The notes beneath the pieces are model-generated. The model did no database searches. It saw nothing but the letters and a program-made list of their open reading frames with translations, and was not told the origin of the DNA. Below, in pieces: positions 20,245 to 53,759 of a stretch of 64,000 nucleotides of DNA (position 1 is the stretch's first letter; every line of letters begins with the position of its first letter). This DNA is from Chlorokybus atmophyticus (Eukaryota > Plantae > Mesostigma and Chlorokybus algae). The translations under genes and the position numbers were made by a program. The stretch is from assembly GCA_009103225.1 (NCBI GenBank), contig RHPI01001116.1, positions 379,380-443,379 on the forward strand, written 5' to 3'.

Positions 20245-23200
20245 AGTGACTCTCTTGGATTGCGTCTCTTGGGGCAAGCAAGAGGGTGATGGCAGCTTGA
20301 CAGCCGATGAGACTGGAAATATACATGTCCACTCAGTGCTTGGTTGAACCTGCATGCTGCATGGCACTGGCCCTTGAGGTCTGTTCACTTGTCTTGGTAA
20401 CCTTTGGCCAAGGGCTGGCTAACTTGTGGCAGTATGGTCAGCACGCAGGTTGCCGTGTTGTAGCAACTTCAGGCTGTTGTTGAACAATTGCTCCAACCAG
20501 TGAGGCTGTGCTCGCTACAATTTTGGGAATCCGAATTCTGCCGGGGCCATAGTTTTGTTCAGCATGCTTGTTGGGTCCTGGTGCTTACATGGTGGAATAC
20601 ATAGCACGACAGAATGCTGTGGTGGTGGTGGGATCTAATGACGTGCTGAGAGCTGCAAATCATGGTGTTGTTGCCTTCACAGCACACTAGCTCAGCGTGC
20701 TGTGAAGGCACGACAGTTGAAGCAGTATGACAGAATGCTGCGTCTGCGCGGTTACCACTAAATTCATGCAACACAACTACCCATCTGAGCACACCTCGCA
20801 TTCAGTGCGTGACTGACTGTTGCATCGCGCATGCTAGTCACCAGTTGTTAGTGTTTGGCCCAATAGACTTTAGGTTCCAAACCCTACAATGCGTCACTGT
20901 ATTAGGCCCAGCATAAGCATGTGGGCCAATCAAGTAATAAGGAGGCAGCTTGCAAGAAAATGCGATGGTGAACTCGCCCGCTTGTTGGAGCCAACCGACC
21001 AGCAGCTACTGTATGGTGCCAAATGGCATGCAATGTGCACCCATGTGCATGTACGGTATGCCAAGTAAAGTCATGATTGCTGTTGTCTTGCTTCACATGG
21101 CCCCTTCTGTGAGTTTGCTATACAACAACTCTTATGTTGGTTGATTATGAGACATGATGCAACCTATCATCAACTCAACTAAGTTGAGTACTCAACCAAT
21201 GTGCAAGCATACAAGATAGCTAACATGGATAACGCCTTCACGAATCTGACCGGGAGGTATAGCTCCACACCTTACAACTCAGTTATAACCCACTAGCCTA
21301 TGTGCATGATGTACGTGCAGTAGTGGACAGTGATATGGTAGGATAGCGATGGCAGACGGACAACCTGCAGCAGGAGGGGCGGGTTAGTCCAGCGCTTGGC
21401 ATGCGTCGTGGCAGTGCTGTGCTGTACACAAAATGCGATGTGGGGTGTGTAATACAGTATGCAAGGATTGTGGCATGCATGAGAATGTGCGATGGTGTGC
21501 TGAAACCCGCGTTACATATGTATGTATGTACGTAAAGATTAGAGATGCGAGCAAATGTGCATGCGCAGCGCCGGCTTTTGTGATGCGTCGCAATCCGGTT
21601 GCGATGGCCGGTGCATGCTGGCAGGCTCTAGAATCTGGAATGATGTTGCTACACGGCAGCAACTTGCTACAGTGTAAACACCATGTTGTGCCATGGTGGC
21701 ACACAGTGATTACACCTCAACTACACACGTGTGCATGCGCTCAGCTTTGTGTATTTGACATATACAACATTGCACACGTGTTGATGCGCATTTGCAACCG
21801 AGGATGCAAGGGCGACCCCGACCTGCATGCTCATGCATCAAGCTTGCAGCGCCGCCCTGCTCGCACCTGACACACCGCATGAACTCGGCCTCCAGCAAAT
21901 CGAACAAGAAGAGGGCGTCAAACAGAGGCTGCCCCTCTCCTCAGCCGCTGAGGAGAAGGGCAGCCTCTGCGTGAGGCGTGCAGTAATACTACACGCGTCA
22001 CGCAAACCACGCAGGAAGAAAGAGACCTGGTACAATGAGCCTTACACCAGAGGCTGCCCGGCAGGGCCCTCTGCTCATCAGCACTGCAGTGCCGGGATTG
22101 ACACCAAGCCCGGGTACGTCCTCAGCAGTAGGTTATGCGCAATAAGACACTCAACAACAACGAATTCAAACAACCACGTTCAACGTGGTTCTTTGGTGCA
22201 GCAAACAAGTTGTTTGCTAATGAACGCTGCCTGCGTTGCATGTTGTGCTCCTTGCCTACCTGACGCTGTGCGTGCTGCATGCACATGGCCTGAACACCAA
22301 GTCGGGTTCCGAGCAAACAGGCCGCCAGCATCTCATAAAAGTTGGACTCTGTGACACCACAGATTACCGTCAACACTTTGTGATGACAGCTGACAACCTT
22401 GCACAAGGCAATGGACTTGGCACACATGTTTCAGGAGTTTTTATCACCTGACATGCTTTTGCGGTAGCTGCGTGTGTGGGTGGCTGCTGCTCATAAGTGC
22501 AAACAATTTGCAACAGTGCAGCCGCTCAACTGCAATGCGTCCCGGGTGCGATGTGTTGACAGCCGCCTGCTGCGCATTGCAGCTTACTTCAACCGAGACA
22601 GTTGTACTGCCACTGGCATGCGCATGTACATGCTGCCATTGCATATTGCTTGTGTGGCTTACCTAAGTCCACATGTTGCCGTCTCAGCCAAACAACATCC
22701 ATGATTGAGCCATCCAGCAGCTAGCCCTGTTGTTGCATTGCCGATAATAGCTTTGTGTAATAGTAATACAGAAAGATAGAGGCGGAAGGCTGAGGCAAAG
22801 CATGCGACATGCAATGACTGTCGGCTTGAAGCTGGCACCAACAAATCGTGCTTTGCAATTGAGAAAGGCGAGAGCCAGCCGCAATGCCACACAACAACAG
22901 CAACGCATAAGTGCTAATGTGGCAATCGAGTTACTTCCAAGCACCTTAATGCCATTTTTTGGCAACAGTGTGTTTATGAGCCAAGAGACCCGGTCTCCTT
23001 GGCAAACAACTCAGGAGTCGCCTGGGACAGCAACAGATGCAGCCGCTATATAGACATGCTTGCTTAAACACTAAGTAGGCAGTGGCTACACACATTGCGC
23101 CTGTTGCTTTGCAAGCTCACAACCTGCAATGCGCTGTGCCGGTAGCCACGCCGACAGCGGGTGCCAAGCCGCAGCTAATGGTTGAACAAGCGCTTGCGCC

Positions 23201-23489
23201 GCACCTTTGGAAAACTTCACAAGGCAAGGAGCACTGACGCGCCCCCTTCGTCCTAACCCAGCTGCCCACCGACGCCGCCAGCAACGAGCGCAGAGACAAG
23301 CGCAGCAACAAAGCAGCAGCGCCTATTTTCCGGATAGGCACAAAGTCATTTTCTTCACCGCGGATATCAACTTAAACTATCAGCGTAAATTAAGAGATAT
23401 CGATGACGGTGCTCATGTCCCCCGCGATATTGACAGGACCTGCGCTTCTTCTGTCAGACAGTGCAGGGCTCTTGGCTTTGCATGCAGCT

Positions 23490-26400
23490 GCCGTGAGGGC
23501 GATGGCGGCGGCGGCGGCGGCGGAAGAGGAGGACGACGACGACAAGAAGTGCATTGAAGCTTGAGATCTAAACACCTGCTCAAGATTGTACACCTGCTTG
23601 GTCTGCCGGTCCGTTGTACACCAGCAGCAGACCAAGCAGGTGTACAAAGGGCGAATTGCGGAGCCAACTGCCTGCTTGACAGGTGAGCTTACTCAAGCTG
23701 GATTTGTTGACTGTCGCGATTGGCTGGCCTGTCCTCGCAGCCAACATTACCAATATAGGAGCGTTGTTGAAAATGCCAGCTGGCGAAACGCCGCAAATTG
23801 AATGCATGGTCCGAGTGCCGCAGCTGGGTCACGTCAATGCAAGCTGCCAGCTTGACCCTGCTGTCAGTGACGGCAGGGTTAAGCTGCTTGTGTGCGCGCA
23901 CGAGTGTATGTGCGTGGGTGAAGCGCAAGCGTGCAAGCATCTGTGTGGGTGCGGACTCGACGCACATACATGTGTTGAGAGCGCTTCTACAATTTGGCGT
24001 TATTTCAAATGCAGTGCTTGTTATCCGCAGTCATGCCAGCCTGGGTCAAACCCGCATACGACAAGCTCAACCAATGAACTGTCGACATCGGGTCCAGCAA
24101 GCCCAATACCAGATGCATCGCCTCAAGGATGTCAGGTCCATCGCATGTGTGCACATGTTCAAGCATGCTTGCCTGCGTGCATGCGTGGGTGCACTTACAA
24201 ACTTTTTGCTGATTATAGGCGATGACTCAAGTGACAGCAATGCGGACAGCACAGAAAGACATGCGCTTTTTCAAGACGACGGCAATCAAGAGCAAAACTC
24301 CAGTCAAGATCAGGCAGAATTGGCCATGCAATCGGTGCAACTGGCTTGAAGTAGCAGTACCTTCTGCTAGCTTGCTTAATGGCAACTTCGCTATGGCTCA
24401 ACCCACTCGTCCTCTCGAATGCGAACGGGGTGGTCAGGTGACTTGCTTGCTACCATGCCAAGCATGCAGAGGTTGCATGAGTTCAATGCACTTTCTGCAT
24501 GCTTTCCGTTGCGCCCAATATGTTGAGCCAGCTGCGAACGTGCTGTGCCGAAACGTGGCACAGCTTAGCAACTTGCTAACACGATTCAGCTGTGGCACGA
24601 CTTCTATTCACCTTGCATATTTATCAAGAGTAGTACTCATGACTTGCAGTCGTTTGTTTGTCTGGAGCTTTGGTGGAGGTGGCGCCCGCTTGGTGTCGCT
24701 AGCAAGCTGCTGGTGCATGCTAATGCAGGGGGCGTCTAGGCTGTGAAGGCTAGGGCAAGCGACAACTTGCAAGCAACTGCGCTTGGATTCTCTGGAGGAA
24801 ACAGCACGCAGAGATTCAATGGCTGTTCCGCGCATGGCTCAGGTTTGGTTGTCACAGGTGCGCATGGGCTTGTGTTTGTTCTGTCGAGCGTGTGCACGAA
24901 CGAGTGCGTGTATTTATGAGCCAAGCATACTAGCGCACATGCATGCATGCGCATGTGGACACATGCATGTGGGCAAGCGAGCATGCGTGGGCACATTGTG
25001 CCCATGCATGTGGCACGTGCATGCATGACATAGCCAGCCACCTGACCTCGTTAGAATACAAAGCCAACCAAATGCTCGTCGCCCAGGATTAGTCATTGCC
25101 AATAGTTGCTATGCCGCATGTTTCATCTTGCTGTGCAAAGGCACGCTCGTGCAGGCGTGCCTCACCTCATTGCTTAGTGCGCGTATCCACGCGGTGCAGA
25201 AGGAATCCATTGCTGTGGCCAGCACTGCCACAATGCAGGTGAGCTTCTTCACGCTTGCCATCATGCAGATACAACATCACATCAAGTGAGTAACCATCGT
25301 AGCACAATGCATGGCATGCATTGCAATGTGCCACATTGCAGTGTGTGGCAGGCTACAGGAGGCGGATGATATAGATTTGGTGAGACGCGTGCGTGGGTGC
25401 GTGGGCGCGCGCGCGTGATTACGTGATTATGTGCGTGTGGTGAAAAAGTAACTTTTTGACTGCCAGTGGTTGCTGCTTGCGATTTTCGACAACTTCAAGA
25501 CAACTTGTTGGTGTCTCGCCTTGTGTTGTGTGTCACAAGTTGTGTCCTTATCATGCAGGCGATGAAGATGAGGCCTTCCAGTTCAGCAACGATGAGAAAG
25601 AGGTTTTGATGTTGATTGAAAGTTGTCATGATGACGGCAACACTTGCGCCATCAACCAACGATTGTGCATGTCCATCCAGTTCGTTTGGCTGCACGGACA
25701 ACTGTTCCCTTACTTGCTGGTGAACATTGGCTTGAGCGTGAGCGTGGTCAAGGCACGTGTTCTCTTTACCTGTACACATGCTGCACTTCAAGCAACTTGC
25801 GCACACGCACACGCACACGCACACGCTTACTCTCATCCCCTCACTCGCATCACGCTTACTCCGGCACACAATCATATCATCCCACTGGCAACATGTGAGC
25901 GAGTCCAACTCGCGGGCCGCCTGTATGCATGCAGGTTCAGAGTCTTCTGCTTAGGCAACTTTAATGAGATGCTGGAGCCACAGGCAACAACGGCACGGTT
26001 ACCTACACGTATACGGTATTCTTTGTACGCCGTGTTGTTGCTTATGGGTTACTTACTTTGTTGGTGTTATCATGATGAACTACAGGAAGAACTTCTTGCA
26101 ATGCGCTGTCTCAGGCTGCAGTATCAGGACATGCTTGTGGGAGACATCTACGGTGGTGTGGACTACGCCAAAGTGGGCTTGTCCGTCTCCAGCTTCGGCG
26201 AGGCGCATGTCAAGTCGCCCGAGCGTGCCTGACATCCATGCTACGCACACACACTTTGTGCATGCAAGTCTCAACACACACTCATATGCGCGCGCTTATG
26301 CGTGTTTGTGCACACATGTCTGTTTGCCTGTGCATGCATCCGCGCGTGTTGAAACGCATCTACGCGCGTGAGCTTATGTGTCCAGGCGTAGACATGTTGC

Positions 26401-28960
26401 ATGCGTGCGCGCATAAGCGGTTGCACGCACAGGCAACTAACATCGTTATTCCCTCATCCATTTGCAGGTGGCAACTGAAGGCAAGAAACTGCCGGACTGT
26501 AAGCTCGCAGACATGGCGCATGTTACAACATCGCCCACGTATGTGATCAACCGTTGATCACGTGACGAAGCATTGCGGTGACAGACGACCCCCCCCCCCC
26601 CCTACTTAGAGCGCGCGCATGTTGTCCTGTCCCGCCTTGGCGTAATTGGAGGCAAAACGTTTCAAAACGCATCTTTGATGGTTTATTCATGTGCGGCCAC
26701 TCACACGATGTACACGATGCAGAAGACGAAATTTAGAGTGATCAGCACGGCAAGCAACCTCAAGAAAGCAGGTATGGTACTTGCGTGCGCGCGTGCTTAG
26801 ATTCCCTCTTTATGTGTGCGCAAAGCGTTTAAGGCTGTGTTTCAAGCATATTAATGCTACAACCAAGGCCTCATTTACGTCCTCACGCGTGCGGTCTCCC
26901 AAAGGTGATCACTGTCGCTAGCATCAACAATAACCCCGATGTGCCCGGCATAAATGGGTTCGGTATGAGTGTCAACTTGAACGTACTTCACCTCGCGCCA
27001 AGTTTCGGGCCAATCCCGCTCCTCACCGAGCCTCAGGCACGCATGCATGTTGGCGTTGTGTGACGATGTGTCACTATCATCTGTGGCTATGCGCGTGCAC
27101 TGCTTGTGTGTGCTTGTGCATGTGAGAGCGCGCACATGTGTGTGATGAAATGTGTGCGTGAGAAAGGCTTACGAGGCAAACATGATGGACTGAGGATACT
27201 GTCCTTGGCAAGGACGAGCGTGAGTACTAGATCAGCGTGCTTCTGGAGCACATGCCAAACCTGATTGAAGAGGAGAACACTCCGAACGAAGCCTTCAAAC
27301 AACAGGTTGGGTTTGTTGTGTCAGCGCACAGTTCTGAAGTCTAGGTCTGAAGGTGGTTCTGCGCACGCATGCAAGTGTATGCATGTGTCGCACCCACTCG
27401 TGTGCACCCACGGACATGCCCACCAGCATGCATGCACACGCATGTATGCACACGGTCGCATGGTTTTCTTATGTATGCGCTTGCTTGGCGATTGATGTGA
27501 CTGACGCAGTCATGGCTTTTGGGTTATTGATGGTGGACACATGCGTTTTCTCCCCGTGCTATCATGTACTTGACAGACCCTTTACCTGCGGTTGGTCCTG
27601 AGTCCTAATTGTGCATGTGCACATGTGTGCGTGGGTGTGTGCATACATGTGTCTGTGCGCACACGCGCGTTCACACTCGTGTGCGAAGTGCGAATTTGCA
27701 TGCACATGAGCACGCTCACTCTCTGTGACTTTGCATGGTGCACTCGGTAAGGTGCAGTCACAGTAGTATTCACAGCACAGCAAGGCAGTGACATTTGCAT
27801 CACCTTTGCTTGCAGGCGAACGATAGCCGCCCTTGCCTCTTCTCGCGCATCACTTCTGCGGCGCTCAACTACTTACTCCATCAGATGGTCAGCCAATCTG
27901 GTCGGCTGGGGATGAGAGGGATCAAAGGTAAGGTTTGAGATGGTGGATGCTGCAGCCAACAGCAGGCACCTTTCAAACCATCTTCATCTTTATGTGCTTC
28001 CAACACACGTATGCATGACCTCGGGCTTCTGAAGGAGCTTGGGTTGGAGTATGCTATGCGCGATCTGCCTCCCGTAGACTGCTATAAGAAGCGATTGATA
28101 TGAGGTGCCATAGTTGTCTGAGCCTCAACACCACTTCCAGCGCATCCCTAGAAGATTACCGCCAGGTAAGTGCATGCACTGCCTTTCACTTCTTACCCCT
28201 GACCACTTGTGCTGAAGCGTGGCAGCATAATGCCAGGTGACGTAGAGAAGGTGGGTGAGCCAAACTACAACACCACCCTTTACGACTACTTGCCTTTGCC
28301 CTTGAGAGATGAAAGGATCACGAGCTTTGCATGTGAGTGGGTGCATGTTGCTGAAGGCATCATGCATTACATGGAGGCATGGTGTCTTCATGTAATCTAG
28401 CACCTGTTGTTTGTGTCCGCAGTTGATTCCGCACCAGAAAGGTCCAATCTGGACTGAACCTCAGGCGGTACTAAGAGGAAGACGGCAGGTCAGTCACAGC
28501 TACCATGCGTGTTGTGTCAATAAAGGTCCACGTGCAACATGGTTCTACCATCTACATGCCACCGTGGCAATCGGGTTGCAAATGGTTTGCGCAAGCATTC
28601 ACCACTGCTTCTATCACAATGCCTGCATTGATGAATGCGGTCCTAGTAACGTTTGGTCCAGAAAGCCCCTCATTCTCAGCTATGCGACCACTTCTGCAAA
28701 CGGAAGGTCCAAAAAGCCTTTTGCACGCTTGTGGTGGACGACATTGCCATCTACGGTGACTCGGGACGAGCCACACAACCACGTAGCGCAACTCAGTGCA
28801 TGTACATATGCGTATGGATCGACACGCAGTCTCAATCTACTCAGGAGGCTCCCCACTATTGTATTGTGCGGCACCCTGCATCCCGAGCAGACTGCTTGCT
28901 GACTGTCCAGGAGAAGGCCAGGATTCAGGGCTTCCCATACTACTGTTGGCTGTCACATAC
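23490..28960 (+). pseudogene. Decayed chromomethylase (CMT-type C5 DNA methyltransferase); 5' boundary approximate
   Basis: Collinear remnants: BAH-like EIQWLFRAW (~24810), chromo-like LVGDIYGG (~26135), motif IV relic ILSL...CFWSTCQ* with frameshifted ENTPNEAFKQQVGF (~27195-27320), AALNYLLHQM..GRLGM (~27860), YAMRDLPPVD (~28055), LYDYLPLPL (~28280), LIPHQKG, KPLILSYA..GRSKKPFARLWW..TVTRDEPHN (~28660-28780) and HPEQ..LLTVQEKARIQGFP (~28880-28940). Stops and frameshifts are present. Confidence 0.8.
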
Positions 28961-29089
28961 AGTATGGCAGGGGGTGAGACATGTATGTACACCGAATTGC
29001 AATGTGGTGCTTGTGAAAAGCTTGACAAGCATGACACACTGTGTCATGCATGGCATGACTCGCCATCACATAACACACAATATATGACC

Positions 29090-32000
29090 GCCTGCAGGCA
29101 TTCATCTTCAACAGCATCAATGACCAACTTGAACCAGCACCGTGTATAAAGCTTCTCATTATGCTTCTCTACAATGACAGCCTGTCATTACTGAGTATAG
29201 CCTCACAGCATGAACAATGCATCTACATGTGCCTCAACCTGCGTGGAATGCATCAATGTACAAACAATGCGAAACGGCAATGTATGCATCACAATCACAG
29301 CGACTGCCTGGTTAGTGACACTGCATGTATGCATGCTTGCATGGCTAACGGGGTGTTAGCAGTAGTAGGTAGATTAGGTAGAGTAGCCCCCGTGGTGAAC
29401 TACGTGGTAGTGTGAAACGTGAGTGGCATGATTGTGAGATGGTGATGGTCGCTGTGCATAAGCATATGCCACGCGCATTGTATGTACAATGCATCCGTTT
29501 TAGCAATAGACATGCCTACCCTTCTACCGGGCATACCGGGGCGCGCGATGTGTCTTCGCAGGATAAACCGCCGACGGCGTGTTACACCGCGCCACTGCAA
29601 CTAGCTGCATGATGCTATGCAACGACCTGCACCGCACATACCGTACATGCATTTATACAGTGACATCCTTTACTGTATGCACATGCATGCCGGCATTGTA
29701 GCACACCCCTTTTGTACAACTGTACCTGGGTACATGCCATGGCATACAGTAGCATACGGTAGTGGTTCAACCACTGGTTTGCCGCAGGACAATGTCTTAG
29801 CCTTGAAATTCTGGGTGTGCCAGGCAGCCTGGCCACTGGCACAATAGAACCCCTTTTATGTTGAGTCAACATACATGGGTAGTCTGTCTGCTGCTGCTCA
29901 TGCTGCTGGCTGCCGCAAAGACGCTCAAGACTGACTGTGTGCACACACGACGCAGTCGCGTTGAGCAGGGACGACGCTGTCGTGGGTGGCGGCGGTGATG
30001 TGGGCGGAGGAGGGGGAGTCCGTTGAGTCAGCTGACGCTGCTGCTGCTGCCTGCTGGATGATGGAGCCGCTAACCAACGGCCGTGGTGCAGGTGATGCGC
30101 GTGCATGCATGCTTGTCTAACGGGGTTTGGGCTAGTAGTGAAGTTAAGTAGGTAGCAAGTAGGAAGAGCACCCGGTGGTGAATGTAAGTGTCGTGTGCTG
30201 TTGTGTGTGGTGTGCAATGCATGCCTCACATTGTGATACATGCCACAATCTCTGCATCCTATATATTGTACACGTGCAGTGATAACTCCAACTGATGCAT
30301 CCTTGCATGACTAACGGGGTGTTGATTAGAGGGTCGGTAGCGGTGGTAGTGTCGTAGCTAGGCAGCCCGATGGTGAATATGTTGTGATGATAGTGATTTG
30401 GTGAGTAGCGTGCTTGCCATATTGGTTGCATGTATCACACCATGGTACGCATGGACACTTGCATGCGCGGTCACACGTCACCTTTACTGTATACACGTGG
30501 CCATGGCAGCGACAGACGTACTTGAATGTTGCACACCACCGCAGCTTCAAGCCTTGAGTCAAGGCTTGAAGCCCTTGACCGCGGCGGTCGAAGGTCGACA
30601 ACTCAACAGAATAGTAATAGTAATTGAATTACACAAACTAACAACCCCCAAACCTGGGGCAGGTAAATATAATCATCTACAGCCACACATACAGTTTTGC
30701 CAAACTGAAACAAAAATGCTACTGCACAGCTGACTACAGTTGCAACCTTGTCAGGCGGCAGTGCAGAAGTTGGAAGGGGGAAGCTTACACTGCAGCCCGC
30801 AACTTGGCCAGGGGGGGAAGTCTGGAAAAGAGCCATTGCTAACTGCAAACTCGCTTGTACAAGCTTGCTTGTACGAGCTCCGCTGCAACCTGAGGTCTCG
30901 TGGTCATAAAACACAAATTTCTGTGGACGCCTTTGGGTCAGGCGACAGAGTTGTTGCCAACCACGCTATACAGCGACTGCAAATGTTGATGATGGCAAGA
31001 GTGTGTGAGGGGAACCTATGTACGACGCCTAGAACGGGGAGGTTCAACGTCTCTGGGGCTTCTGTGCAGATGTACACCGATGTAGCTTGTCTCCCACTGC
31101 GGTGGGTTTGCCGACTTCTGCTGCTCCTGCAAGCACAGAGAGTAACGCCAAGAAATACTCAAGGAGCCATGCAGACTTGACGGCTTCTATTCGCAATGTA
31201 CTACATAGCAATGGTGTGTTTCAACGAACCTGCTTCTTGGCTTTGCACCCAATGGCGGTGCACTTGAAGTACTTTTTAGGATACACCGGCTCGTCTCCAA
31301 GGCAGTTCCTGTTTGAGGTCTGCTTCTTGCCGTACGTTTTCCATAAGTAACAGTCCACCAGCTGTGGCACCAGAATCGACAGGTTGGACTTTTGCTGCTT
31401 GACAATGTGTGCAGCATAACATTGATAACGTCATCCAGCAACTAGCACAAGCATACAAGTGCAGTCACTGCAAGTTCCAAAGCTGCCTACCGGTTGATCG
31501 CTTATGAAGACCTGTCGCTGAAGGTTGTGGTCGATGGTTGCGGCACGGTGCATGTTGCGGATGCCGAGATGAAGGCAGTCGGACATGGAGGTTGGAGACG
31601 AGGAGACGACCTGGAAGCTTCTGGCCGGGCCGGTTGAGCCAGAGTTTGCACAGCTCATTCCGAGCCGAGGAGAAGACCTGCTGGTGGGGCCCAGCTCAAG
31701 GCGGACAAGCTCCTCGTGCTCCTTGGGGCATGGCGGCAAGGAGGCGAAGCAGTTCATCGTCATAGACAGCGAGAGCCCGGCTGCTCAGCGAGCCTCAAGT
31801 TCACTGCCACCAACAGCAGCACAGCACACAGAGGGCTGCCTCACGCCCTGCTTCAACCTCCGTGAGCGACGCCAACGACGACGATGACGACGGCGACGAC
31901 GCCGCCGCCAAGCACAAGAAGAAAAGCTTAGCTTTGAAAGCTTGTTGAGAGGTTCCACTGACTATGCCAAAGTGGAAGAAGCAAGTTGCTATATGCACCC

Positions 32001-32160
32001 AGAGACAAAGCCCTCCGGTGCCGTTCCTGCGCTTTCCGCAGTGCGCAGCTCCAGCCTAAACCGCGGTTCATATTGTTGGTTAAGAACAAGGCGAAGTTTC
32101 TAGTTTAGGACGTCAACATCGTACCATGACGATGTTAGGCTGCAGCGAGAGATTGACGCC
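29090..32160 (-). repeat. Left arm of a long, diverged inverted duplication (partner ~35990-37890)
   Basis: Reverse-complement homology is readable from the promoter side (32100 ctagtttaggacgtcaac vs 36050 gttgacgtcttaaaactag) out to 29165-29250 vs 37720-37795. The left arm carries extra insertions. Confidence 0.9.
31016..31763 (-). CDS. Non-canonical WRKY-domain protein, copy A (171 aa; exons 31763-31491, 31361-31230, 31126-31016)
   Basis: Spliced ORF ...RQVFISDQP|LVDCYLWKTYGKKQTSNRNCLGDEPVYPKKYFKCTAIGCKAKKQ|EQQKSANPPQWETSYIGVHLH. It has a WRKYGQK-like heptad and a C-x4-C-x23-H-x-H zinc finger. Confidence 0.85.
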
Positions 32161-33375
32161 ATTGTGGTACCGTTTACCTGACGGTATGACTGACTACGAT
32201 GCCTCTCTGTAACGTGTTGTATAGCGAAGTGATGGCCAGCTTTGCGCTCGACGCCATCATGACGCCGTTGACGCCTTCACGGGGAAGGCTTCATCTGTGT
32301 CCCCGCCTGCGTGTCGAATCGACACTGTCGATGCCGCACTGCGTAGCAGCTTTCATGTCGGTACAAACGGTTACGGTTTAGATTGTTTCGTTTGCTACCA
32401 ATGACGAGTGAGTAGTGGTCGAAACATGTAGACAGTACCAGTGGGGTAGTGAGTACCTAGTGGTCAACAGTGGTAGCATACCGCTGCTGGCTGTCTCCGC
32501 AACGACCTGCATAATGGTGGGGACGGGAGTAATAAGTTCAGTTCCCCATGATTGCGGTGCGACCTTGGCATGGTATAAGAGCCTCCGGGGGTTGCAACTG
32601 GCGATTGATGGCGAAACCATGGCAATAGTTTATCTAAGTAAATCTAATTTAATTGTTGAAGGCTACCACTTGGAGAGCTCATATATACATCAAGAGTGTT
32701 TGCTTGAATAAAATGATGCAATAGGATATAAATGCATAATGTTTATCACATATATAGTACTATTTTTACTGCATGATAAGCAACGAAGCATCAAAAACAC
32801 TTGTCACCTTTATCTCGTTATTTTCTTTCAATTACCTGCAGCAACACAGTTGTATCAAAAACCTGATACATCATATTGTATTATATGACTTAGTAATCGT
32901 GTGTCAATGTTAATAGCGTGGTTGGCTCATAGATACGTCTAGGCTTGAACATGGTTACGAGCAAATCCGAATAAATACTGAACATCGCGATAAGCCATAA
33001 TGCTTTTAGTATATTATATTATAAATATTATTATAAATCTATTCTAATAACAAAGGTATGTTCATATCACATTTCGTTTTTGGATGATTATATGACTTAA
33101 GTAATCTTGCAAATACTACTTACATGTGTACATGATCATTCAATCAAATCCATGATAATATCAAAAACAATAATAAATAACATATTCATAGAAACGCTTG
33201 CAAAAGTGCAAAAGAGCATGCCATGTATAATATTTATCAGGCGTTTAAACACATACATGCGCGTACATAAACGTACGCAATGTGGTTACGTAATGGTCGT
33301 TAATGTTTTGTACTGCACAAGCTGTACATTATTATCAATACAAATTTATACAGCTTATAATAGTTAATATCTATG

Positions 33376-44453: not shown

Positions 44454-47400
44454 GCAGCTTAGAGTATTACATGTTGTAAAATGTGGTGGGCCAGACTGGC
44501 CGAAGAAACGTGTGCCCCCAGTGGCGCAGGGGCTTATCTCCAGGTACAACTGTTTCTGCTTGCAAGCTTTATGGGACACACCGGCCGTTGTGGCCTGGCA
44601 CGACCGTTACGGCTTAAGCGACGACAGTCACGGTAGTATTGGGCACCAATCGAAGCTCTGTTGCTCGTGGGTTCCCTTCAAGAAATGTCGTGCCTTGGCA
44701 TGCTGCGGTTTGTGCAGTGCCGCAACGCACCAAAACCAGTAGCGTTTTAGAAAACCAAGAAGTAAACTCTGTGATATCGTAGCATCAACAGTCAATGCCG
44801 ACACATTGAATGTGTATGTACAATGCGGTGGAACTGATGCACGCTGGTACTCACGCAGGCTGCTTCAATGTTAACACACCCCTAAGCCGGGCCACAGTCA
44901 GTAGCTGCCAGCATTGCCGGGTTGAGCCAATATACTACCTACACTACGGTGTGGGTCACCTACACCAGAGACGATCTGCTTAAAACTACAGGCATGAGCG
45001 CATCATGTCGTACTTGCGCTGACATGAGGGGATAGCGCAATGAAGGCAACTTGCTCGCAAGACTGAAATTCAGTAAGGTTGTGGCAAGCTGCGCGAGTCA
45101 ACGAGGCTTCCTAGCCAGTATGCCGACATGCGACTCCCAACATTGCAGGTACTAACCCACTAGCAACTGCCTGTCTTGACGTCACTGTTTGCAGAGCAAC
45201 AGCAATGGATACAATGCGTTGCTTTCCGCAGATTCTTTGTTACGGCCTAGTACTGACTGTCAGTGAGGCGAGCACCGGAGCAATGACGCGTGGCGAGCTG
45301 TGTCATGCGATGCTGTGTCCGTCTGTGCCGCACAGTGGCAAGGTGCCGCGGTACACTGCTTCTGGCATTGCGTGGTGCCAGCAGGTACCAGCAGTGTATG
45401 TGGTTGCAGCAGCACAATGACGCACACACCAGCAGCGACCCGCGTGCACTGAACTAGTAGTAGTCTTGAAGAGCACTGACCGACAGGGTTAGTACCGGGT
45501 ACTCACCCTATTGTTATGTTAGCCCTGTTGCATTGGCAGGCGCTTTAGATGTTAACACGTCAAAGCGCTTGTACGAAGCGACTTGCAAGTAGGAAGTAGG
45601 CTAGGGGGGTCAACTCAGTACCACCGTTCCACCACGGCTACTTGGCACGGGATGTCACACCGCATGCTATGCGGGTTGGTCTTGTTCATTGCATTGATGT
45701 GTCGCCGTCTACCGTCTGTTCACTCAAGCTGCACAACACGGTGTGATGCATGCACGAGCTGTTGTTGCATGCACTCAACAGCAATGGCAACATTCAGTGA
45801 TATGCCCGTCAGAGTGCACAGCCGCTATAGATACATTCTATGTAGGTTGCATGCAACTCACAAAGTGACACAATGTGATTGTTTTTTAATGCTGACATTG
45901 ATATGCCATGTCAACGCGTTGAATACATCAGTGGTATGCTCAGCGCATTGCCGTGCCCTATGGTAAGTTGAGGAGTGCTGCTATGATGCCATTATACCAG
46001 TGGCGACTACAACGGCAACATCTGCGATGGCCCTGATAGGCTCTCCCCCCAGGCACGCGCGTGTCGCCACAGCACTGGTCCTGCTAGGTCACCTGGTGGT
46101 GTGTTGTGTTGTATTGTGGACGGGTGATCGAGCGATGGTGTCATGCTGTGGTGTTGGATATGAGATAGGCAGCGTGCAGCACTGTGCTACGACCCTTGTA
46201 CATGTGTTTCTAAGCGAAGTGTCATTGTGTGCGTGGGTGCACGGTACACGATGCATAGTTGTGATGTCGCACAGTGTTTCATGCAAGTCAGAAAGCGGGT
46301 CGACGGTGCTCATGACCGTCTTAAGTCAACAACGACCAACCCATCACTGTGGCACGGCTTACTTGAAGTAGTTGCACTGGCCTATGCATATACTCTGCCA
46401 CTTGCCACGCAGTGCGGCACGTGGTTACGGCAGCTATAGCAACATGCGCACGCATCAACACGTGCAATGCGTGACGCAAGAGTCTCTCGCAAATGAGGAG
46501 CGTACAGCTAATCCCTGACCCGCGCCCACCCCTCATTGCCAAGCAACGTCCAGCAATCAGTCCTCAGCACATTCAACAAGTTGTAACGCAAGGCAATCAA
46601 CTCAGTCAAAGAGCAGTAATTTCTGTATTACAGCGCTGGTCGCAGCGCTGCAGCCAATAGATGACTGTTGCAGCACCATGGGGTGGGACTCAGCAGCAGC
46701 AGCAACAGGAGTCCAAAGGGCTTCATCGCTCCAAGTGTGCAGGCATGCGTGCCACTCCAGGTGGACAGCCTGAAGCACCAACATATAGGGCATGCGAGAA
46801 CGTCGGCGCATGCAGGCACAGTGCAGGTTTTGTCACCAGCAGCGCTCAGTTGCGGTTATCGCAATGCGGGTTATTCAATGCTGTGTTGGAGTGAGTCCAG
46901 CACGGCATGGCATAGTGGATAGTTGTATCGCATAAAGGGTGGAGGTGTCTCTCGGTTGGAGTTTTCCAGTTTTTCTGTTGTCTCTACTAGCTTCTAACTT
47001 GGATTTGTCTGCGTTATGCATGTGCTGTGGGTAACTGGTGCAGGTACTTCCCGCGTAGTAGGCATGGACACGCAGACTGTGTTTACGTCACAGACACGGC
47101 TCATGGATATGTCATCTGTGTCCTTTTTGTAATTCCATACCGGGTGGAGCTACCGCAGCGGTGTAGCGCTGCAGCTTCAAGTCCAGAAAGATGGATGCAC
47201 TCGCGTCACACCAAGGTGGTACAGGACCTTGCATTGACAACATGTTGCGTACCAGGTGTATCGTTGCTGTTGGAACCGACCAGGGAGTTTAGTCAATTTC
47301 GTTTAGTTGTCAAAAGAGATGCACAATGTACTACCTACGTAGGTAGGCATGTCAGCCAGCAGACGCTTGATCAATCAGTGAGGGAAGCTTTCCCCTTTCC

Positions 47401-48180
47401 GTTGAACAAACAGAGGTTACCGACTGGCTGCTGCTCTATGCCCAAGCTGCAGCGGCCGCAGACCCAACCTTTCAATGTCAGATCAGCCTTGCCAAGCAGG
47501 GCCTGCCCTAACCTCGGTTCTCGGTTTAGGTATACATACGTTGTGAAGTTTTGGTGTACTTCTACGTGCATCTCGCACGCACACGCTTAGAGCGCGAGTC
47601 TCAGTTGGATGAGGACAACGATGCTAGAGACACGGCCGAACACACATACACACGACCTGCACCTGCCAGGGGGTTCTCGGTTGGGACCTGACGCTTCTTC
47701 CCCCGTGCATCAGCTCGCCATACCATAAGGATGTGCGGCTGTGCGCGGAGTGGGGAGAAGACAACCCCCCCCACCAACTAACTTATACGGGGCTTGCTCT
47801 TGCCATGCCACGCCTGTCCAGACATATGTCATGCTAACCGTCCACGAGGGCTCATTCCCCGCGCAACCCGACACGTACCACCAGACATTTCACGCTGCAC
47901 TGAACACATTTGCAACGCACATGTGTATGCAAACCGTACATGCCTTGTTTTAACAAGTGTGCTGCGGTGTGGTTGCATATGAGCTTGGATTTGAGTATCA
48001 CACTGTGACACTCAAATCCAATGCGCATGCGGTCGTGTGTGCTGTGACTTTGTGCCTATGCACACACATACACGCGCAGTTGCGCACTAGCGTGTGTGCA
48101 GACATGATGCAACGCTGCACACTCGCACATTTCTCTAGCATACGCACGTACGCAAGCACGCACGCACCCACGCACGCATG

Positions 48181-48933: not shown

Positions 48934-49827
48934 GGCCGTGTGTCCGTGTTTGTGTGCACGCGCGCTTGTATATGCGTGCACTGCACGCATATTGCATATG
49001 GCGGGTGCCTGTGTGTTAAAGCATGCTTTGTGCAGATGTACAATAGCTCTTTATCATGGTATGGGCTTGTGCGTGCATATGTGCGTGTGTATGCCATGCA
49101 CACGTGTGCAGTGCATGTGTATGTGGTCAATGCATGCACATGCAGCACAGTCCAAGTTGGAGAGTGCTGAATGTGGACCTGGCTTTTGAACCGCCATGCA
49201 GAAGAGTTATACAACACCAGCTCCAGAACTTTACCAAGCGGTTTATGACACGGGCAACCTTGCAGCTACCCCAGTATTGCCATGCATATATCATCCAGCT
49301 AATGATTACATGTTGGAAGCATGCACATCCAAGCACTCCATCAACTGCAGCAAAGGGCACGGGCACAAGCTCTCTGTGGCCGCTTGGCGCAAAGATCTGC
49401 TGCTCAACAATGATCATAAGATCAGCGACTCGCGTGCCAGTATGAACAGCACATTGCACGGGATCAGAAGGTGCTGGGTAAAGTCTTAGTGAATACACAA
49501 CCAGCTCAGTGTTTGACCAGTTTTGGTTGTCAGCACAGCATGCAGCGTGTACTTCAAACTGGTCTCTGCTAGCTCGATTTGGTGGTAGACTGTGGGATGT
49601 GACTCACTACAAAGACGTCGTCACATGATCAAAGTTGGAATTTCGTGGCATCAACACTGCTGCCTAATGGACTCAGGCACCTCTGAAGCCAGGCGCCTAA
49701 AGTTACCGACTTCAGTGAGTTAGTCAGAGTGGCAAACGCTCATATGCCTGCTTCATCGCATGTGCAAGCAGCACGCAGACACAGCAATTCAATTGTGGAA
49801 AGAAATAGCCCTTAGACACAGCAAGAA

Positions 49828-52743
49828 TTAGCCCTTAGCAAAGTTCAGTACGCACAACTTGGAGCCGTTGACTGCCAGGACCACCCTGGCCTCATCTGAC
49901 GCAATGCAATGAACGGTTGCAGCATGCATCTGCACGATCGTAGCCGCCTCGCGCATGTGCTCGGTCGGTATCACCTCGTTCAAACACGTGGTGCTGTCAT
50001 CCAGGTTCAGCACCTGGATGCCAGCATTGTACGCGCCGAAAGTCTCGTGGCCCTGAGGCAACAACATCACACGTGAGGATGTGTCACAGTTGACATCACC
50101 AACTCCTGATGCTTTGTGTAGGTGTGTCGACAATACCTACCTTTAATGAGGGAGCTGTGACGATGGCGTAGTTGTTGTGCATGTGGATGCGGATCCACTG
50201 ACACGCTGCGGGGTCTGACCCGTGCAGACGCGCAAAGGGTTTCAGGTTAAACACATTCATTGGCGCGCAGGTCAATTTGTTGTACACGTGCAGCCTCTGA
50301 TCTGTTGTGCGCACGACCAAGTACTTGCTGTTCAGGGCAACCTGCGTGTGTGTATAAGTTGTCTCCCATTCACTCTGACATGATTTTGTAAGTACGTGCG
50401 CATCCAGGTATAACCAACTTCACTCGCCTGCAACACGCGCTCTTGCTCGTAGGGTGCCCCCGGTTTGGGATCTGGAGGCGCCAACTCAAGGATCCTATGC
50501 ATGCCGAGCAAGTCCCACACATGCATTGAGTTGTCCTGCCATACATATCCACAACCTTATTGAAAAACCCTAAACATGTCGTATGAATTCGCCAGGAGAT
50601 GCATTGCAGAACTGCTTACAACTAAGCACACAACATAGGAGCAAACAAGACAACAGTACACGCAACAAGTGGATAGTAGTACAACAACAACAACAACAAC
50701 TCATACCCCGCGGATGCACGCACACTCCACGGTGTCATCTCCGGCTCGCAGGTATGGCACTCGGCGGCTTTGACCTGAGTCGTGAGCAGTAATTTGGTTG
50801 GCAAGGGGTTCCAGCCTGACCACAACCCTATCATCCACTTGCTCGTTGACGAGCCGCCACACCGCCATACGGCAACCGCGATCCGGGGCAGAATGCGCGG
50901 TGGCTACGTAATTCTTTGACATCGCCATGACCTGTAGGAACAGCCCAAGAGTGAGGCAAATGTGTTTGTGCTGGTACTGCTGTGATGTACACAGAAGTGA
51001 CGTGACGTTGCGCAAACAACGAAACTGAAAAAGAGGCTGACACAACTACACGCACATGCATGCAAAGAGCACACACACGGATACGCAAACGAGCACATGT
51101 GCGCTTATCCACCGGCACACGCATGCAAGTAGACACGCAGACCCGCGACACATTGAGAAAAATTATAAATACGCACGAACGTACGCACGCGTGTGCGCCA
51201 ACCCGCACACACGCAGAGACCAGCACTTGCTTGGTATCAGACACATGCAACAACCGCCACCATCCCTACCAGAGTCCGCCCCCAATGTGGCCGTATAGCA
51301 GTCTCGCAGACCTTCTCAGCAGTGTCTATGTTCCAGACAGTCAGCGCGCCTTCACTGTCGGCAACAGCCACCAGTTCCCCACAACCGTCCATGGCGTCCA
51401 CCAGCTTGCCTTCAAACTAAAACACAGTGACACTTACGCCACATGCACGCCACACAGGTGATGTGCATGCTTTTGCGTGGGTGCCGTGCTTACATGCATG
51501 AGTTGGTGCAGACTGGACCCCGTGTTCACGTCTGTGACGTGCACGTGACCCATCGTTGGTGTGACGCTCCACTGGCTGTGAGCAGTCACCAGCTGCGGAA
51601 GCAATAAATTGTGTACTTGGTGTTCCACACACTTGTGCAGTATATAATGCAGTAAACAGGTTACATAACATGCATGTAGAGAAGGGCCAGACGCGTGCTG
51701 ATTGGTATGCTTACCTTATCTTCGTTGATGTGTATGCCACACACAGAGTTGCCACTGGCGCCAACAAACTCAACAGAGTGAAACTGCATAAGACCTGTCA
51801 TCAGCATGCGTGCGTGCGTACACGCATTGTCAACTTGCACATGATGCTTGGCAATAAAAAGTTGAACGCTTGCCAGCAAGCACCACAGCTACGCTCTGTA
51901 GAGCTAGTGACAGAGTAAGTGAATGGTGAATGCAATAGTACCTCTGTGCCATAACGTCCCGTGGCCCAATTCAGCTGAATGCGCCGCCTTCGAGTGTACG
52001 CTGCACGCCAATTGCCGGCATAGCCTTTGGGCAGACTGTGCAAGCCCAGCTCTTTGACACTGAGCGCGTGCCAAAGGCCATCGCTGTCACTCGCTTCCTT
52101 CCAATTCCTGTTGGGTAGTCCAGGTTTGAAGGCACAACACGCACGCCCATGCACAGGGGCGCAAAGTCATGCGTGCTCAATGGCAGGTAACGGAACAGCA
52201 GTTGAACATGCAAGCAGTTACACTAATGCAACGAGCACCAACAACAGTTGATAGCAGTCTTGTACTTTTGTTGTCGCTGCACAGACTGCAACCACACGTT
52301 GAAACAATCCATGGGGATGGGTCGTGCAAACAACCTCCAGTAATGGCTAAGAGCACACTAAAAAGTAGGACAGCTTGTTCAGCGCAATCCAGCACTGCAA
52401 GAAACTTAGACCAGAAGCTGTTGAGTTACAGCAGTTTGGTGGAATTTGGCCGACTGTCACACAGTGTCTAGCATGCCCGGTGTCAAGCTGTGTAAAGAGA
52501 GTATGCTGAACAGCTGTTGTATGCTGCTCTGTGTGGTCTGTTGGGTTTGATCAGGTCTGATCAAACCCAACGCTCCATCACTCAGTGTCGGGACAATCAA
52601 CACATACATACATAATCCCTCAACCTGCAAATTATTGAGCAAATGGCTGCGACGCGTCCGCCAGCCAGCTCAAACACCACCCTGAGACAGTCTCGGTCCA
52701 GCAGCGACCAGTCCGGCTGCAACCAACCCGCCTCCTCCTCCAT
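49828..52743 (-). CDS. F-box protein with a C-terminal WD40-like beta-propeller
   Basis: WSLLDRDCLRVVFELAG...IICR|NWKEASDSDGLW (F-box), then WRAAYTRRRRIQLNWATG and WD-like repeats (VADSEGALTVWNIDTAEKV; MHVWDL). Ends ...LCVLNFAKG*. GT-AG exons are in phase. Confidence 0.85.
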
Positions 52744-53208
52744 GATGTATGCCTGTGCTCCACTGCTGAAACACACACGAGATAATCCGTGTGGCCACAG
52801 CCCTTGCCACCGTCTGCCACCGCCGCCCTGGTGTGGAAGAACAGCAGGGAGGAGCGGCAGATTCTCAAGCAGGACACGCCTTAGATCTGTGTGATCTCTG
52901 CGGGCACTGCGTGTGCTGCATGTTCATCAGACCAATGTGCTGTGCATACTGCGCCGCTGCATCCTTCTCCAACGCTCAGCTAGCGCCTCGACCACACGGG
53001 CGTCGTCCTGAACCGGCGGGCCTTGCCCTCGCTGCCGCCCACGCCGCCGCCGCCGCCAAAGAGGAGCAGAAGCCTGTGGCTGCTGCTGTGCTCAATGACC
53101 ACTTTACAGCCTGTAAAGCTGCCACTGTGCCTTCAGTGTGATTCATGACAGGCGAAACCGTCATCCGGATTCTCAATCCCTACAACCTGCAACCTGATCA
53201 CGGGTGTT

Positions 53209-53759
53209 AAACATCGCATGTCGTGCAACTTGTGAAGTTGCCCCACAACTTGTGTCGCAAGTTGTGGGACCCACATTTCACGGCAACCTCGCATGCGATG
53301 TTGTAACTAAAGTCGACAGTCACAAGTTGTGACCCAAAAATTACAATAACATACACGTCTTTGTAATTGGAGGTAGTATAACATGTAACGACACATGCAA
53401 CACTGTATGATTTGTGAATATTGACAAGGGTCATCATCGCGATCATAATTGATCTTAACATATTTATGTCTGCAACATTGCAAACGCGATAGAACATTTG
53501 CGGTATTTGCTGACAAAAAGTCATAAAGATAGCATTTCCATTTGTGAGTGCAGCTGTCGTCACTTTTATACATGCCTGTCAAGTTGCCGTTAAAGGACAT
53601 ATTGTATGCACAGTGTTGCGCAAATTGCAATCGCAATTGTCATATGAGCGCCAATGACTCACGTTGTAATCGTGACTCACAATTTACACCCAATGCTCAA
53701 TTGTTTGTCGGACATGCAATTGAGCGTTAGGTATGAGCAACGAGTCGTTGCTCATACCT
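53209..53759. repeat. Cluster of nested hairpins, possibly a MITE or transposon end
   Basis: aacatcgcatg...catgcgatgtt encloses cccacaacttg-5nt-caagttgtggg. Also gtcacaa-g-ttgtgac (53319-53333) and aggtatgagcaacga-g-tcgttgctcatacct (53729-53759). Confidence 0.7.

What the first reader, a model, noticed from the sequence alone, without database searches (positions are those of the whole stretch)
21173..53759. Large excess of perfect short palindromes with a one-nucleotide loop
Seen in sequence (start, arm length in bp), all with a 1-nt centre: 21173 (8), 21923 (23, one mismatch), 22172 (9), 22200 (9), 26543 (9), 29029 (10), 29173 (8), 29761 (7), 29857 (8), 30544 (14), 32311 (7), 38550 (15), 45485 (12, one mismatch), 53319 (7), 53729 (15). 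A random 64-kb sequence should give about one 8-bp case and essentially none at 14 bp or longer. Some are nested A-A'-A arrays (21173-21196, 32311-32331). Almost all fall in the decaying or TE-rich parts. Inference: a recurrent mutational process that seals or snaps back DNA ends. Candidates are hairpin-type excision footprints of hAT-like transposases or polymerase-theta templated insertion. It may be a lineage-wide repair signature.
Basis: partly seen in the sequence, partly recalled or inferred. Interest (0 to 1): 0.75.

Follow-up and report, generated by a model that had tools for sequence, protein, structure and literature searches.

The report
Odd palindromes: likely transposon excision scars
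This algal DNA holds about ten times more short perfect palindromes with a one-base centre than chance allows; the clearest ones have the structure left when a hAT-type jumping gene cuts itself out, so they look like scars of past transposon visits.

Summary
All 15 listed palindromes exist. Window-wide there are 35 perfect inverted repeats with a 1-nt centre and arms of 7 or more. Dinucleotide shuffles give 6. For arms of 8 or more the counts are 21 against 2, and for 10 or more, 9 against 0.1. Spacers 3-8 are at expectation, so the peak at spacer 1 is real, about 27-32 events or one per 2.3 kb.

An inverted gene duplication in the window shows that four palindromes are insertions of an inverted copy of adjacent sequence.

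About five events fit it in detail:
- Each is built from an 8-mer, matching an 8-bp target duplication.
- The centre is the complement of the outermost duplicated base.
- The 8-mers resemble known Hermes targets.
- The arms carry a purine-T-nnnn-A signal (8 of 35, about 1 expected).

The A-A'-A events have a switch order never seen in human template-switch mutations.

For the other roughly 25 palindromes the assignment is by extension. Some junctions break the complement rule, and replication template switching is not excluded. The scan saw the same excess in another window (s1-177217), whose follow-up favoured template switching.

The parts
1765..1786 (.). Full 22-nt footprint t1..t7 + revcomp(t1..t8) + t2..t8, built from the 8-mer ATCAACAT; two overlapping 7-nt-arm palindromes with 1-nt centres
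   Evidence: exact match to the k=8 pattern; both centres are complements of the outer bases; the 8-mer fits [G/A]TnnnnA[C/T]
32311..32332 (.). Full 22-nt footprint from the 8-mer GTGTCGAT
   Evidence: exact k=8 pattern; both centres are complements; lies about 550 nt upstream of the arm-L gene's first exon
30544..30579 (.). 14-nt-arm palindrome (30544-30572, centre g at 30558) followed at once by CCTTGAC, which is t2..t8 of the 8-mer GCCTTGAC
   Evidence: the 6-nt repeat plus the complement of the centre sits at offset 0; the palindrome is absent from paralogous arm R
29818..29833 (.). 8-nt insertion (29819-26) that is the reverse complement of the 8-mer TGCCTGGC, placed between t1 and t2; forms a 7-nt-arm palindrome with centre A, the complement of t1
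   Evidence: arm R has GGTGT directly followed by GCCTGGT, without the insertion
29762..29781 (.). A-c-A'-c-A array (TGGTT C AACCA C TGGTT) where arm R has a single TGGTT; inferred 8-mer GTGGTTTG
   Evidence: 12-nt insertion relative to arm R; the second centre is the complement of the ancestral G; the first centre fits only if one T:A pair was lost
29173..29189 (.). 8-nt-arm palindrome, part of a 15-nt insertion relative to arm R
   Evidence: the inverted copy follows CAATGACAG; the centre C is not the complement of the base in arm R (T)
21173..21196 (.). A-a-A'-A array (8-nt arms with a 1-nt centre, then a spacer-0 turn)
   Evidence: does not fit the simple 8-mer rule
21923..22004 (.). Two adjacent long imperfect palindromes with 1-nt centres (23-nt arms with 1 mismatch; 18-nt arms with 2 mismatches)
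22167..22218 (.). Two palindromes 4-9 nt apart (22172 and 22200, 9-nt arms, centres c and g)
23840..23886 (.). Nested pair: a 7-nt-arm palindrome whose right arm starts a 19-nt-arm (2 mismatches) palindrome
24565..24579 (.). 7-nt-arm palindrome, centre c; arm carries TnnnnA
24982..25010 (.). 8-nt perfect (14 nt with 1 mismatch) palindrome, centre t; in GCATG-rich low-complexity DNA
25305..25340 (.). Chain of two abutting 9-nt-arm palindromes (centres g and c)
25443..25457 (.). 7-nt-arm palindrome, centre a
26543..26561 (.). 9-nt-arm palindrome, centre c
27201..27215 (.). 7-nt-arm palindrome, centre g
29029..29049 (.). 10-nt-arm palindrome, centre c
29857..29873 (.). 8-nt-arm palindrome, centre g; arm carries A-TnnnnA
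38550..38580 (.). 15-nt-arm palindrome, centre g
   Evidence: followed by a 3-nt repeat ACC, but the next base breaks the complement rule
40249..40269 (.). 10-nt-arm palindrome, centre c; arm carries A-TnnnnA
45485..45509 (.). 12-nt-arm palindrome with one mismatch, centre g
47985..48021 (.). 18-nt-arm palindrome with one mismatch, centre c
48970..48992 (.). 11-nt-arm palindrome, centre c; 37 nt from the edge of the assembly gap and in low-complexity DNA, so the least reliable case
53102..53118 (.). 8-nt-arm palindrome, centre c
53319..53333 (.). 7-nt-arm palindrome, centre g; arm carries G-TnnnnA
53695..53759 (.). Two adjacent palindromes (15-nt arms with 2 mismatches; 15-nt perfect arms), both with centre g
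3227..3245 (.). 9-nt-arm palindrome, centre c, followed by a direct copy of the right arm
55763..55783 (.). 10-nt-arm palindrome, centre g
60743..60823 (.). Two palindromes 64 nt apart (10-nt arms, centre a; 8-nt arms, centre t, with A-TnnnnA)
13332..13373 (.). 20-nt-arm palindrome with a 2-nt centre (aa)
   Evidence: outside the 1-nt class, origin open
52540..52571 (.). 15-nt-arm palindrome with a 2-nt centre (gt)
29194..31924 (+). Arm L of an inverted duplication (WRKY-type gene and its flank); used to polarise events
36203..37780 (-). Arm R of the inverted duplication; lacks the arm-L palindromes

Best explanation
Most of these odd palindromes are scars left when a cut-and-paste transposon of the hAT type (8-bp target duplication) excised.

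Known chemistry (from the literature): the transposase nicks the DNA and joins the two strands of each flank into a hairpin. Footprints are therefore palindromic P-nucleotide tracts centred on one base, the complement of the base that bordered the element.

Inferred for this genome:
- The hairpins are opened 7 to 20 or more nt from the tip, which gives long palindrome arms.
- When both flanks are opened beyond the 8-bp duplication, their overhangs are complementary and anneal. This gives the 22-nt product t1..t7 + revcomp(t1..t8) + t2..t8.
- When the partner flank is trimmed, a single palindrome remains.
- Repeated local hopping would explain the clustering.
- Footprints can greatly outnumber resident copies, because an element stays at a site for a short time while a scar persists.

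Shown here: the excess, the peak at 1 nt, the insertion polarity, the 8-mer logic, and the complement rule in about five events. Inferred: that the other roughly 25 palindromes arose in the same way, and that a hAT family was the agent.
For: 1. The peak is at exactly a 1-nt centre. [quoted passage not shown]

2. Exact footprints of length 3k-2 occur only at k = 8 (1765 and 32311) and at no other k from 6 to 15. At 30544 the 6-nt repeat plus the complement of the centre follows at offset 0. In that test all 5 hits fall in the complement class and none in the other base classes.

3. Zig-zags with two 1-nt centres share 6 nt (three cases) or 5 nt (one case), never 7 or more, although single arms of 8-15 nt are common. 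This is the ceiling that an 8-bp duplication sets.

4. Paralog arm R shows that 29819 is an 8-nt insertion equal to the reverse complement of the local 8-mer, with the centre being the complement of t1. It also shows that 29761, 29173 and 30544 are insertions.

5. The inferred 8-mers ATCAACAT and GTGTCGAT look like listed Hermes targets such as ATTCACAT and GTGTCAAC (PMC2803484). The hAT consensus nTnnnnAn with an 8-bp duplication is stated (PMC10368747). The arms carry TnnnnA in 9 of 35 (2.2 expected), against 1 for the mirror motif. With a purine at position -7 the count is 8 of 35 (about 1 expected). Position -7 is a purine in 25 of 35. The centre is G/C in 26 of 35, compatible with about 65% G/C at t1 and t8 of Hermes targets.

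6. All the A-A'-A events have switch point 4 before point 1, a class never observed among human template-switch mutations (PMC5453318).

7. 17 of 31 loci lie in one 12-kb stretch (p = 0.0002).

8. Unchecked scan notes report hAT transposases, including one complete element, in this genome.
Against: - No element with terminal inverted repeats and an 8-bp duplication is resident in the window. No transposase domain was found in the 20 ORFs tested.
- Only about 5 of roughly 35 palindromes show duplication remnants.
- Six palindromes are followed by a 3-4-nt repeat whose next base is neither the centre nor its complement. Two polarised junctions, 29173 and the first centre of 29761, also break the complement rule.
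- Abutting palindrome pairs do not share an 8-mer, so each pair needs two events.
- The classical footprint without P-nucleotides is not enriched: 4 against 3.3 expected, in a low-power test.
- The target motif is present in only about a quarter of the arms.
- The density, about one per 2.3 kb, is very high.
- I did not verify hAT presence in the genome or the identity of the organism myself.
Confidence: 0.55

Rival explanations
1. Short-range template switching during replication or repair synthesis. The polymerase briefly copies the complementary strand and returns, which inserts an inverted copy next to its source. This is the reading given by the follow-up on another window of this genome.
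For: The inserted tracts are reverse complements of adjacent sequence, as the four-point model requires. Single palindromes without duplication remnants fit the observed type 3-1-2-4. Chains and abutting pairs (25305-25340, 23840-23886) resemble multiple switches. Junctions that break the complement rule are easier to accept if one untemplated or misincorporated base sits at the turn. Note s1-177217.
Against: The model places no constraint on switch points, so it predicts neither a sharp peak at one nucleotide nor the 8-mer regularity. All the A-A'-A events need point 4 before point 1, which is never seen in human data. It does not predict a purine-T-nnnn-A signal in the arms. The density is far above that reported for humans, where thousands of events are spread over a 3-Gb genome.
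Confidence: 0.25
2. Polymerase-theta or synthesis-dependent end joining at ordinary double-strand breaks. A resected 3' end receives one untemplated base, snaps back, copies itself, and is then joined.
For: This would allow a centre base unrelated to the template, with a G/C bias, and short junctional repeats of 3-4 nt. Short direct repeats are in broad excess.
Against: A 1-nt loop is sterically unlikely for snap-back on one strand (inference). No peak at 3-5 nt is seen. It does not explain the 8-mer logic, the complement rule or the target motif. I retrieved no literature support for a 1-nt preference.
Confidence: 0.1
3. Artefact of library preparation, assembly or gap closing.
For: The window is a scaffold with five N gaps. 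One case, 48970, sits 37 nt from a gap edge.
Against: There is no enrichment near gap edges. The sequences are all different. The structured 8-mer logic and target motif are not expected from an artefact. The published assembly of this alga is short-read at about 775x coverage, so a 15-47-nt feature lies inside single reads. Whether this window comes from that assembly was not verified.
Confidence: 0.04
4. Functional elements: protein-binding palindromes or RNA hairpins kept by selection.
For: Several lie near genes, for example upstream of the arm-L gene.
Against: The sequences are unrelated to each other. They are absent from the paralogous copy. A 1-nt loop cannot form in RNA. There are no Rfam matches.
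Confidence: 0.02

Closest known systems
Ac/Ds, Tam3 and Hermes (hAT superfamily) excision footprints with P-nucleotides
   Same: Palindromic tracts centred on one base that is the complement of the base next to the element. Remnants of an 8-bp target duplication. Targets of the nTnnnnAn type. Arms up to 20 nt are reported for Ds in yeast.
   Different: Here the footprints are found as a standing genomic population, about one per 2.3 kb, with no resident element nearby. The arms are mostly 7-15 nt, whereas plants and Candida mostly give 1-3 nt. Many junctions lack duplication remnants, and some break the complement rule.
Short template-switch mutations (four-point model of Loytynoja and Goldman; quasipalindrome correction of Ripley)
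   Same: One-step creation of perfect inverted repeats from adjacent sequence, appearing as clustered changes or insertions against a relative.
   Different: Those events show no fixed spacer and never have point 4 before point 1. Here there is a sharp 1-nt peak and re-copied 6-nt segments.
Long P-nucleotide coding joints in V(D)J recombination when hairpin opening is defective
   Same: Hairpin-sealed ends opened far from the tip give long palindromic additions. The hAT link to V(D)J is stated; the scid or Artemis-deficient phenotype is from my own knowledge.
   Different: RAG hairpins have no offset, so their palindromes have no central base. There is no target duplication.

Membership tests
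hAT-type excision footprint | Palindromic tract centred on a single base that is the complement of the base that bordered the element | tested here: inconclusive
   Met at 7 junctions: 1765 (two), 32311 (two), 30544, 29819 and the second centre of 29761. Not met at 29173, at the first centre of 29761, or at 5 other junctions inferred from 3-4-nt repeats. The ancestral base is never retained at the centre (0 of 14).
hAT-type excision footprint | Remnants of an 8-bp target-site duplication on both sides of the scar | tested here: met
   Exact 3k-2 footprints occur only at k = 8. The 6+1-nt repeat sits at offset 0 in three independent events. The shared segment never exceeds 6 nt. This is met for about 5 events and absent from the rest.
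hAT-type excision footprint | Target preference nTnnnnAn (Ac/hobo/Hermes family) | tested here: met
   TnnnnA in 9 of 35 arms against 2.2 expected, with the mirror motif in 1. With a purine at -7 the count is 8 against about 1. Excluding the two exact footprints it is 4 of 31 against 0.9 (consensus). The signal is weaker than for Hermes.
hAT-type excision footprint | An active or recently active hAT element in the same genome | not tested
   Only unchecked scan notes. None is resident in the window.
hAT-type excision footprint | An occupied allele at the same site in a relative | not testable with these tools
The collections on hand hold no other Chlorokybus genome.
Template-switch mutation (four-point model) | The inserted fragment is the reverse complement of nearby sequence and arises in one step | tested here: met
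   Arm L against arm R alignment.
Template-switch mutation (four-point model) | The return point 4 does not precede the departure point 1 (empirical rule in human data) | tested here: not met
   1765, 32311, 30544 and 29761 all re-copy 5-6 nt, which is order 3-4-1-2. Single palindromes do comply.
Pol-theta templated insertion (snap-back) | Microhomology at the priming and joining points, and a loop large enough for fold-back | tested here: not met
   The spacer peak is at 1 nt, with no excess at 3-8 nt. No microhomology was seen at the return points I examined by eye (output).

The most novel reading that the evidence does not exclude
The bulk of the palindromes are not transposon scars. They are the signature of a lineage-specific fold-back process at broken or stalled DNA ends that places one untemplated, usually G/C, base at the turn. 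It would operate at about one event per 2 kb of neutral DNA and create new hairpins continually. The few 8-mer footprints would then be a separate minority.
Probability: 0.2. Interest if true: 0.75.

Novelty: new member of a known kind. Interest (0 to 1): 0.5.

Why it matters
If these are excision scars, this alga carries a readable record of where cut-and-paste transposons have been. Scars outnumber resident copies many-fold, which would let transposition rates, target choice and local hopping be measured from a single genome.

The long arms would also mean that hairpin-sealed ends are opened far from the tip in this lineage. That can be tested by looking at its Artemis/Pso2 and Mre11 genes.

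Such scars would be a sizeable share of all insertions in non-coding DNA and a steady source of new hairpin-forming sequence near genes.

If the rival is right instead, the alga has an unusually high rate of a copying error that is rare in humans.

Tried and rejected
1. Search for resident elements with a perfect 10-nt terminal inverted repeat and a 2-10-bp duplication, then with a perfect 8-bp duplication and an imperfect repeat. The only hits came from the 31-36 kb inverted duplication.
2. Test for classical footprints without P-nucleotides (a 6-mer repeated at period 8, with both middle bases complementary to the outer bases). Result 4 against about 3.3 expected, so no power.
3. Test whether the base just outside an arm is the complement of the centre. 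By my own tally from the listing, 10 of 20 against 42% by chance, so uninformative.
4. Duplication-length spectrum allowing mismatches. It is confounded because single palindromes satisfy two-thirds of the pattern.
5. Abutting palindrome pairs read as the two hairpins of one excision. Rejected, because their inner 6-mers differ (sequences).
6. A centre derived from the element's own end base. Rejected, because the target signal does not shift by one position.
7. The ~140-nt units in arm L as a mobile element. They are local only.
8. Protein search with the 110-aa first exon of the arm-L gene: no hit.
10. Rfam and tRNA scans: nothing.
11. The supplement of the genome paper holds no transposon table. 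Yu et al. 2004 is not held.
12. Short direct repeats are in broad excess at all spacers and have no peak, so they do not account for the inverted peak.
Full report
OBSERVATION. 13 have the stated perfect arms.

A scan of the whole window for maximal perfect inverted repeats gave 35 cases with a 1-nt centre and arms of 7 or more. 21 of them have arms of 8 or more, and 9 have arms of 10 or more. Forty dinucleotide-preserving shuffles, done in 2-kb blocks to keep local composition, gave means of 6.0, 1.95 and 0.1, with maxima of 12, 7 and 1. Spacers 3-6 are at expectation.

I also used the real sequence at spacers 3-8 as an internal control and removed low-complexity arms. The excess at spacer 1 is then about 27 events for arms of 7 or more, or about 32 for arms of 6 or more. 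That is about one event per 2.3 kb. Spacer 0 has only a small excess. Spacer 2 has none apart from two long cases at 13332 and 52540. Five more long palindromes with a 1-nt centre and one or two mismatches are present.

Short direct repeats are in broad five- to ten-fold excess at every spacer, with no peak. The sharp peak is therefore specific to inverted repeats.

ASSEMBLY GAPS. The window has five N runs. No palindrome spans one. Only 48970 lies within 100 nt of a gap edge, 37 nt after the gap at 48181-48933, where 0.6 would be expected by chance. The gap flanks are homopolymer or low-complexity DNA. Each feature is at most 47 nt long, so continuity across the gap has no bearing on the finding.

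ORGANISM. Earlier notes of this scan call the genome Chlorokybus, a streptophyte alga. I did not verify this. The published assembly of that alga is short-read only at about 775x coverage (PMC7027972), which fits a scaffold with N gaps.

POLARITY. The window holds an inverted duplication. Arm L is 29194-31924 and arm R is 37780-36203. They are about 80% identical and carry a WRKY-type exon. I aligned the two arms.
- 29173, 29761, 29819 and 30544 are present in L only, inside otherwise alignable flanks.
- At 29819, arm R reads GGTGT followed directly by GCCTGGT. Arm L has 8 extra bases between them, and these are exactly the reverse complement of the local 8-mer TGCCTGGC.
- At 29761, arm R has a single TGGTT where arm L has TGGTT-C-AACCA-C-TGGTT.

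So the palindromes arose by insertion of an inverted copy of adjacent sequence. This agrees with note s1-181075, which I tested here.

THE 8-MER LOGIC. The A-A'-A arrays at 1765 and 32311 both read t1..t7, then the reverse complement of t1..t8, then t2..t8. Each is 22 nt built from one 8-mer, ATCAACAT and GTGTCGAT respectively.
- A scan for this pattern at every k from 4 to 15 found exact cases only at k = 8 among k of 6 or more.
- I then asked, for every palindrome, whether the inner six bases of one arm plus the complement of the centre recur just beyond the other arm. Three independent events do so at offset exactly 0: 1765, 30544 and 32311. All five hits fall in the complement class and none in the three wrong-base classes.
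- An enumeration of all zig-zags that presupposed no length or spacer found 16, against 0.9 in shuffles. Those with two 1-nt centres share 6 nt in three cases and 5 nt in one. They never share 7 or more, although single arms of 8-15 nt are common.

An 8-bp target duplication whose outermost base on each side is replaced by its complement predicts exactly this ceiling.

LITERATURE ON THE CHEMISTRY.
- hAT, Transib, MULE and RAG enzymes form hairpins on the flanking DNA (PMC5499845).
[quoted passage not shown] Arms reach 20 nt in yeast, and 47% of footprints there have arms of 3 nt or more (PMC5873905).
- Hermes makes 8-bp duplications at nTnnnnAn targets (PMC10368747).
- A table of real Hermes targets (PMC2803484) reads mostly [G/A]TnnnnA[C/T], for example ATTCACAT, ATCCGTAT, GTGTCAAC and GTGACTAT. 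My two exact 8-mers are of the same form.

That the first nick lies one nucleotide into the flank is from my own knowledge of the Hermes work. I could not retrieve that paper. The "centred on the complement" statement covers the same point.

TARGET SIGNAL IN THE ARMS. If the arms are flank sequence, they should carry t2 = T six bases from the centre and t7 = A next to it, on both hairpin types.
- TnnnnA is present in 9 of 35 arms (2.2 expected), against 1 for the mirror motif.
- With a purine at position -7 the count is 8 (about 1 expected). Leaving out the two exact footprints, it is 4 of 31 against 0.9.
- Position -7 is a purine in 25 of 35.
- The centre is G/C in 26 of 35. This is compatible with about 65% G/C at the outer positions of Hermes targets.

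The signal is real but weaker than for Hermes. Either the family here is less selective, or only part of the palindromes come from it.

AGAINST THE MAIN RIVAL. The four-point template-switch model sets no constraint on switch points. It therefore predicts neither a peak at one nucleotide nor an 8-mer regularity. The authors also report that event types with point 4 before point 1 are never observed, because the return would have to re-open the new duplex (PMC5453318). Every A-A'-A event here (1765, 32311, 30544, 29761) is of that type. A target duplication produces it without difficulty.

WHAT DOES NOT FIT.
- No element with terminal inverted repeats and an 8-bp duplication is resident in the window. 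20 long ORFs gave no transposase domain. This is weak evidence. For a mobile cut-and-paste element, time spent at one site is short compared with the life of a scar, so scars can greatly outnumber copies (inference).
- More serious, six palindromes are followed at offset 0 by a 3-4-nt repeat of the opposite arm's inner end, where about 1.4 would be expected. In all six the next base is neither the centre nor its complement.
- Two polarised junctions, 29173 and the first centre of 29761, also break the rule.
- Abutting pairs such as 22172/22200, 25305/25322 and 53695/53729 do not share an inner 6-mer. They cannot be the two hairpins of one excision.
- The classical footprint without P-nucleotides is not enriched, although that test has little power.

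I therefore regard the transposon reading as firm for about five events. For the rest it is the best available account of the 1-nt peak, not a demonstration.

DISTRIBUTION. 17 of 31 independent loci lie in one 12-kb stretch at about 21-32 kb (permutation p = 0.0002). An 11-kb stretch has none (p = 0.08). A crude ORF-length proxy shows no difference between these parts. Local hopping of a hAT element would give such a trail. Selection or chromatin could do so as well.

OTHER EXPLANATIONS. There are no Rfam or tRNA matches. The palindromes have unrelated sequences and are absent from the paralog, so a conserved function is unlikely. An artefact is unlikely given the structured 8-mer logic and the lack of enrichment at gap edges.

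RELATION TO EARLIER SCAN WORK. The same excess was noted in another window of this genome (s1-177217), so the process is probably genome-wide. Its follow-up favoured template switching. My evidence points instead to excision scars for the best-resolved events. The scan's notes also report hAT transposases in this genome, which I did not check.

VERDICT. The mechanism is known, so this is a new member of a known kind. What is unusual is the length of the palindromic tracts and their density in a natural genome.

Noticed in passing
window 29330-29480, 30100-30250, 30300-30440: Three copies of a ~140-nt unit sharing a CTAACGGGGT core lie in arm L, inside insertions that arm R lacks. No clear copies occur elsewhere in the window, so this is a local repeat and not a dispersed element.
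   Followed up: partly
window 56360-56444 and 56456-56540: An 85-nt unit is repeated at 99% identity, 96 nt apart. ARAGORN finds no tRNA there.
   Followed up: partly
window 21645-21672: A 28-nt A-A'-A-like structure fits a 10-mer (GTTGCTACAG) with two mismatches. If it is real, it could be a scar of an element with a 9-10-bp duplication, such as a Mutator-like one.
   Followed up: no
window 13332-13373 and 52540-52571: Two long perfect palindromes (arms of 20 and 15 nt) have a 2-nt, non-complementary centre. They lie outside the 1-nt class and have no flanking repeat.
   Followed up: partly
window 21923-22004, 22167-22218, 23840-23886, 25305-25340, 29761-29873, 53695-53759: Palindromes often come in pairs 0-60 nt apart, about 6 pairs where about 2 are expected. 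The pairs share no 8-mer. This suggests either hot spots for re-insertion or multi-step events.
   Followed up: partly
window 2431-2823, 7819-7959, 58885-59183: Assembly gaps sit next to long G, C or GA runs, which are typical short-read assembly breaks.
   Followed up: yes
window 369-866 (-) and 25456-26232 (+): Housekeeping exons: an arginyl-tRNA synthetase N-terminal domain and a short Fumble (pantothenate kinase) match. These were the only Pfam hits among 20 long ORFs.
   Followed up: partly
window 31900-36200: The spacer between the two inverted gene arms is AT-richer (GC 0.44 against 0.52) and has no ORF over 107 aa.
   Followed up: no
window 37790-37830 (arm R): A tandem duplication of a 12-nt unit whose core, CCTCATGAGG, is itself a palindrome. 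It is absent from arm L.
   Followed up: no
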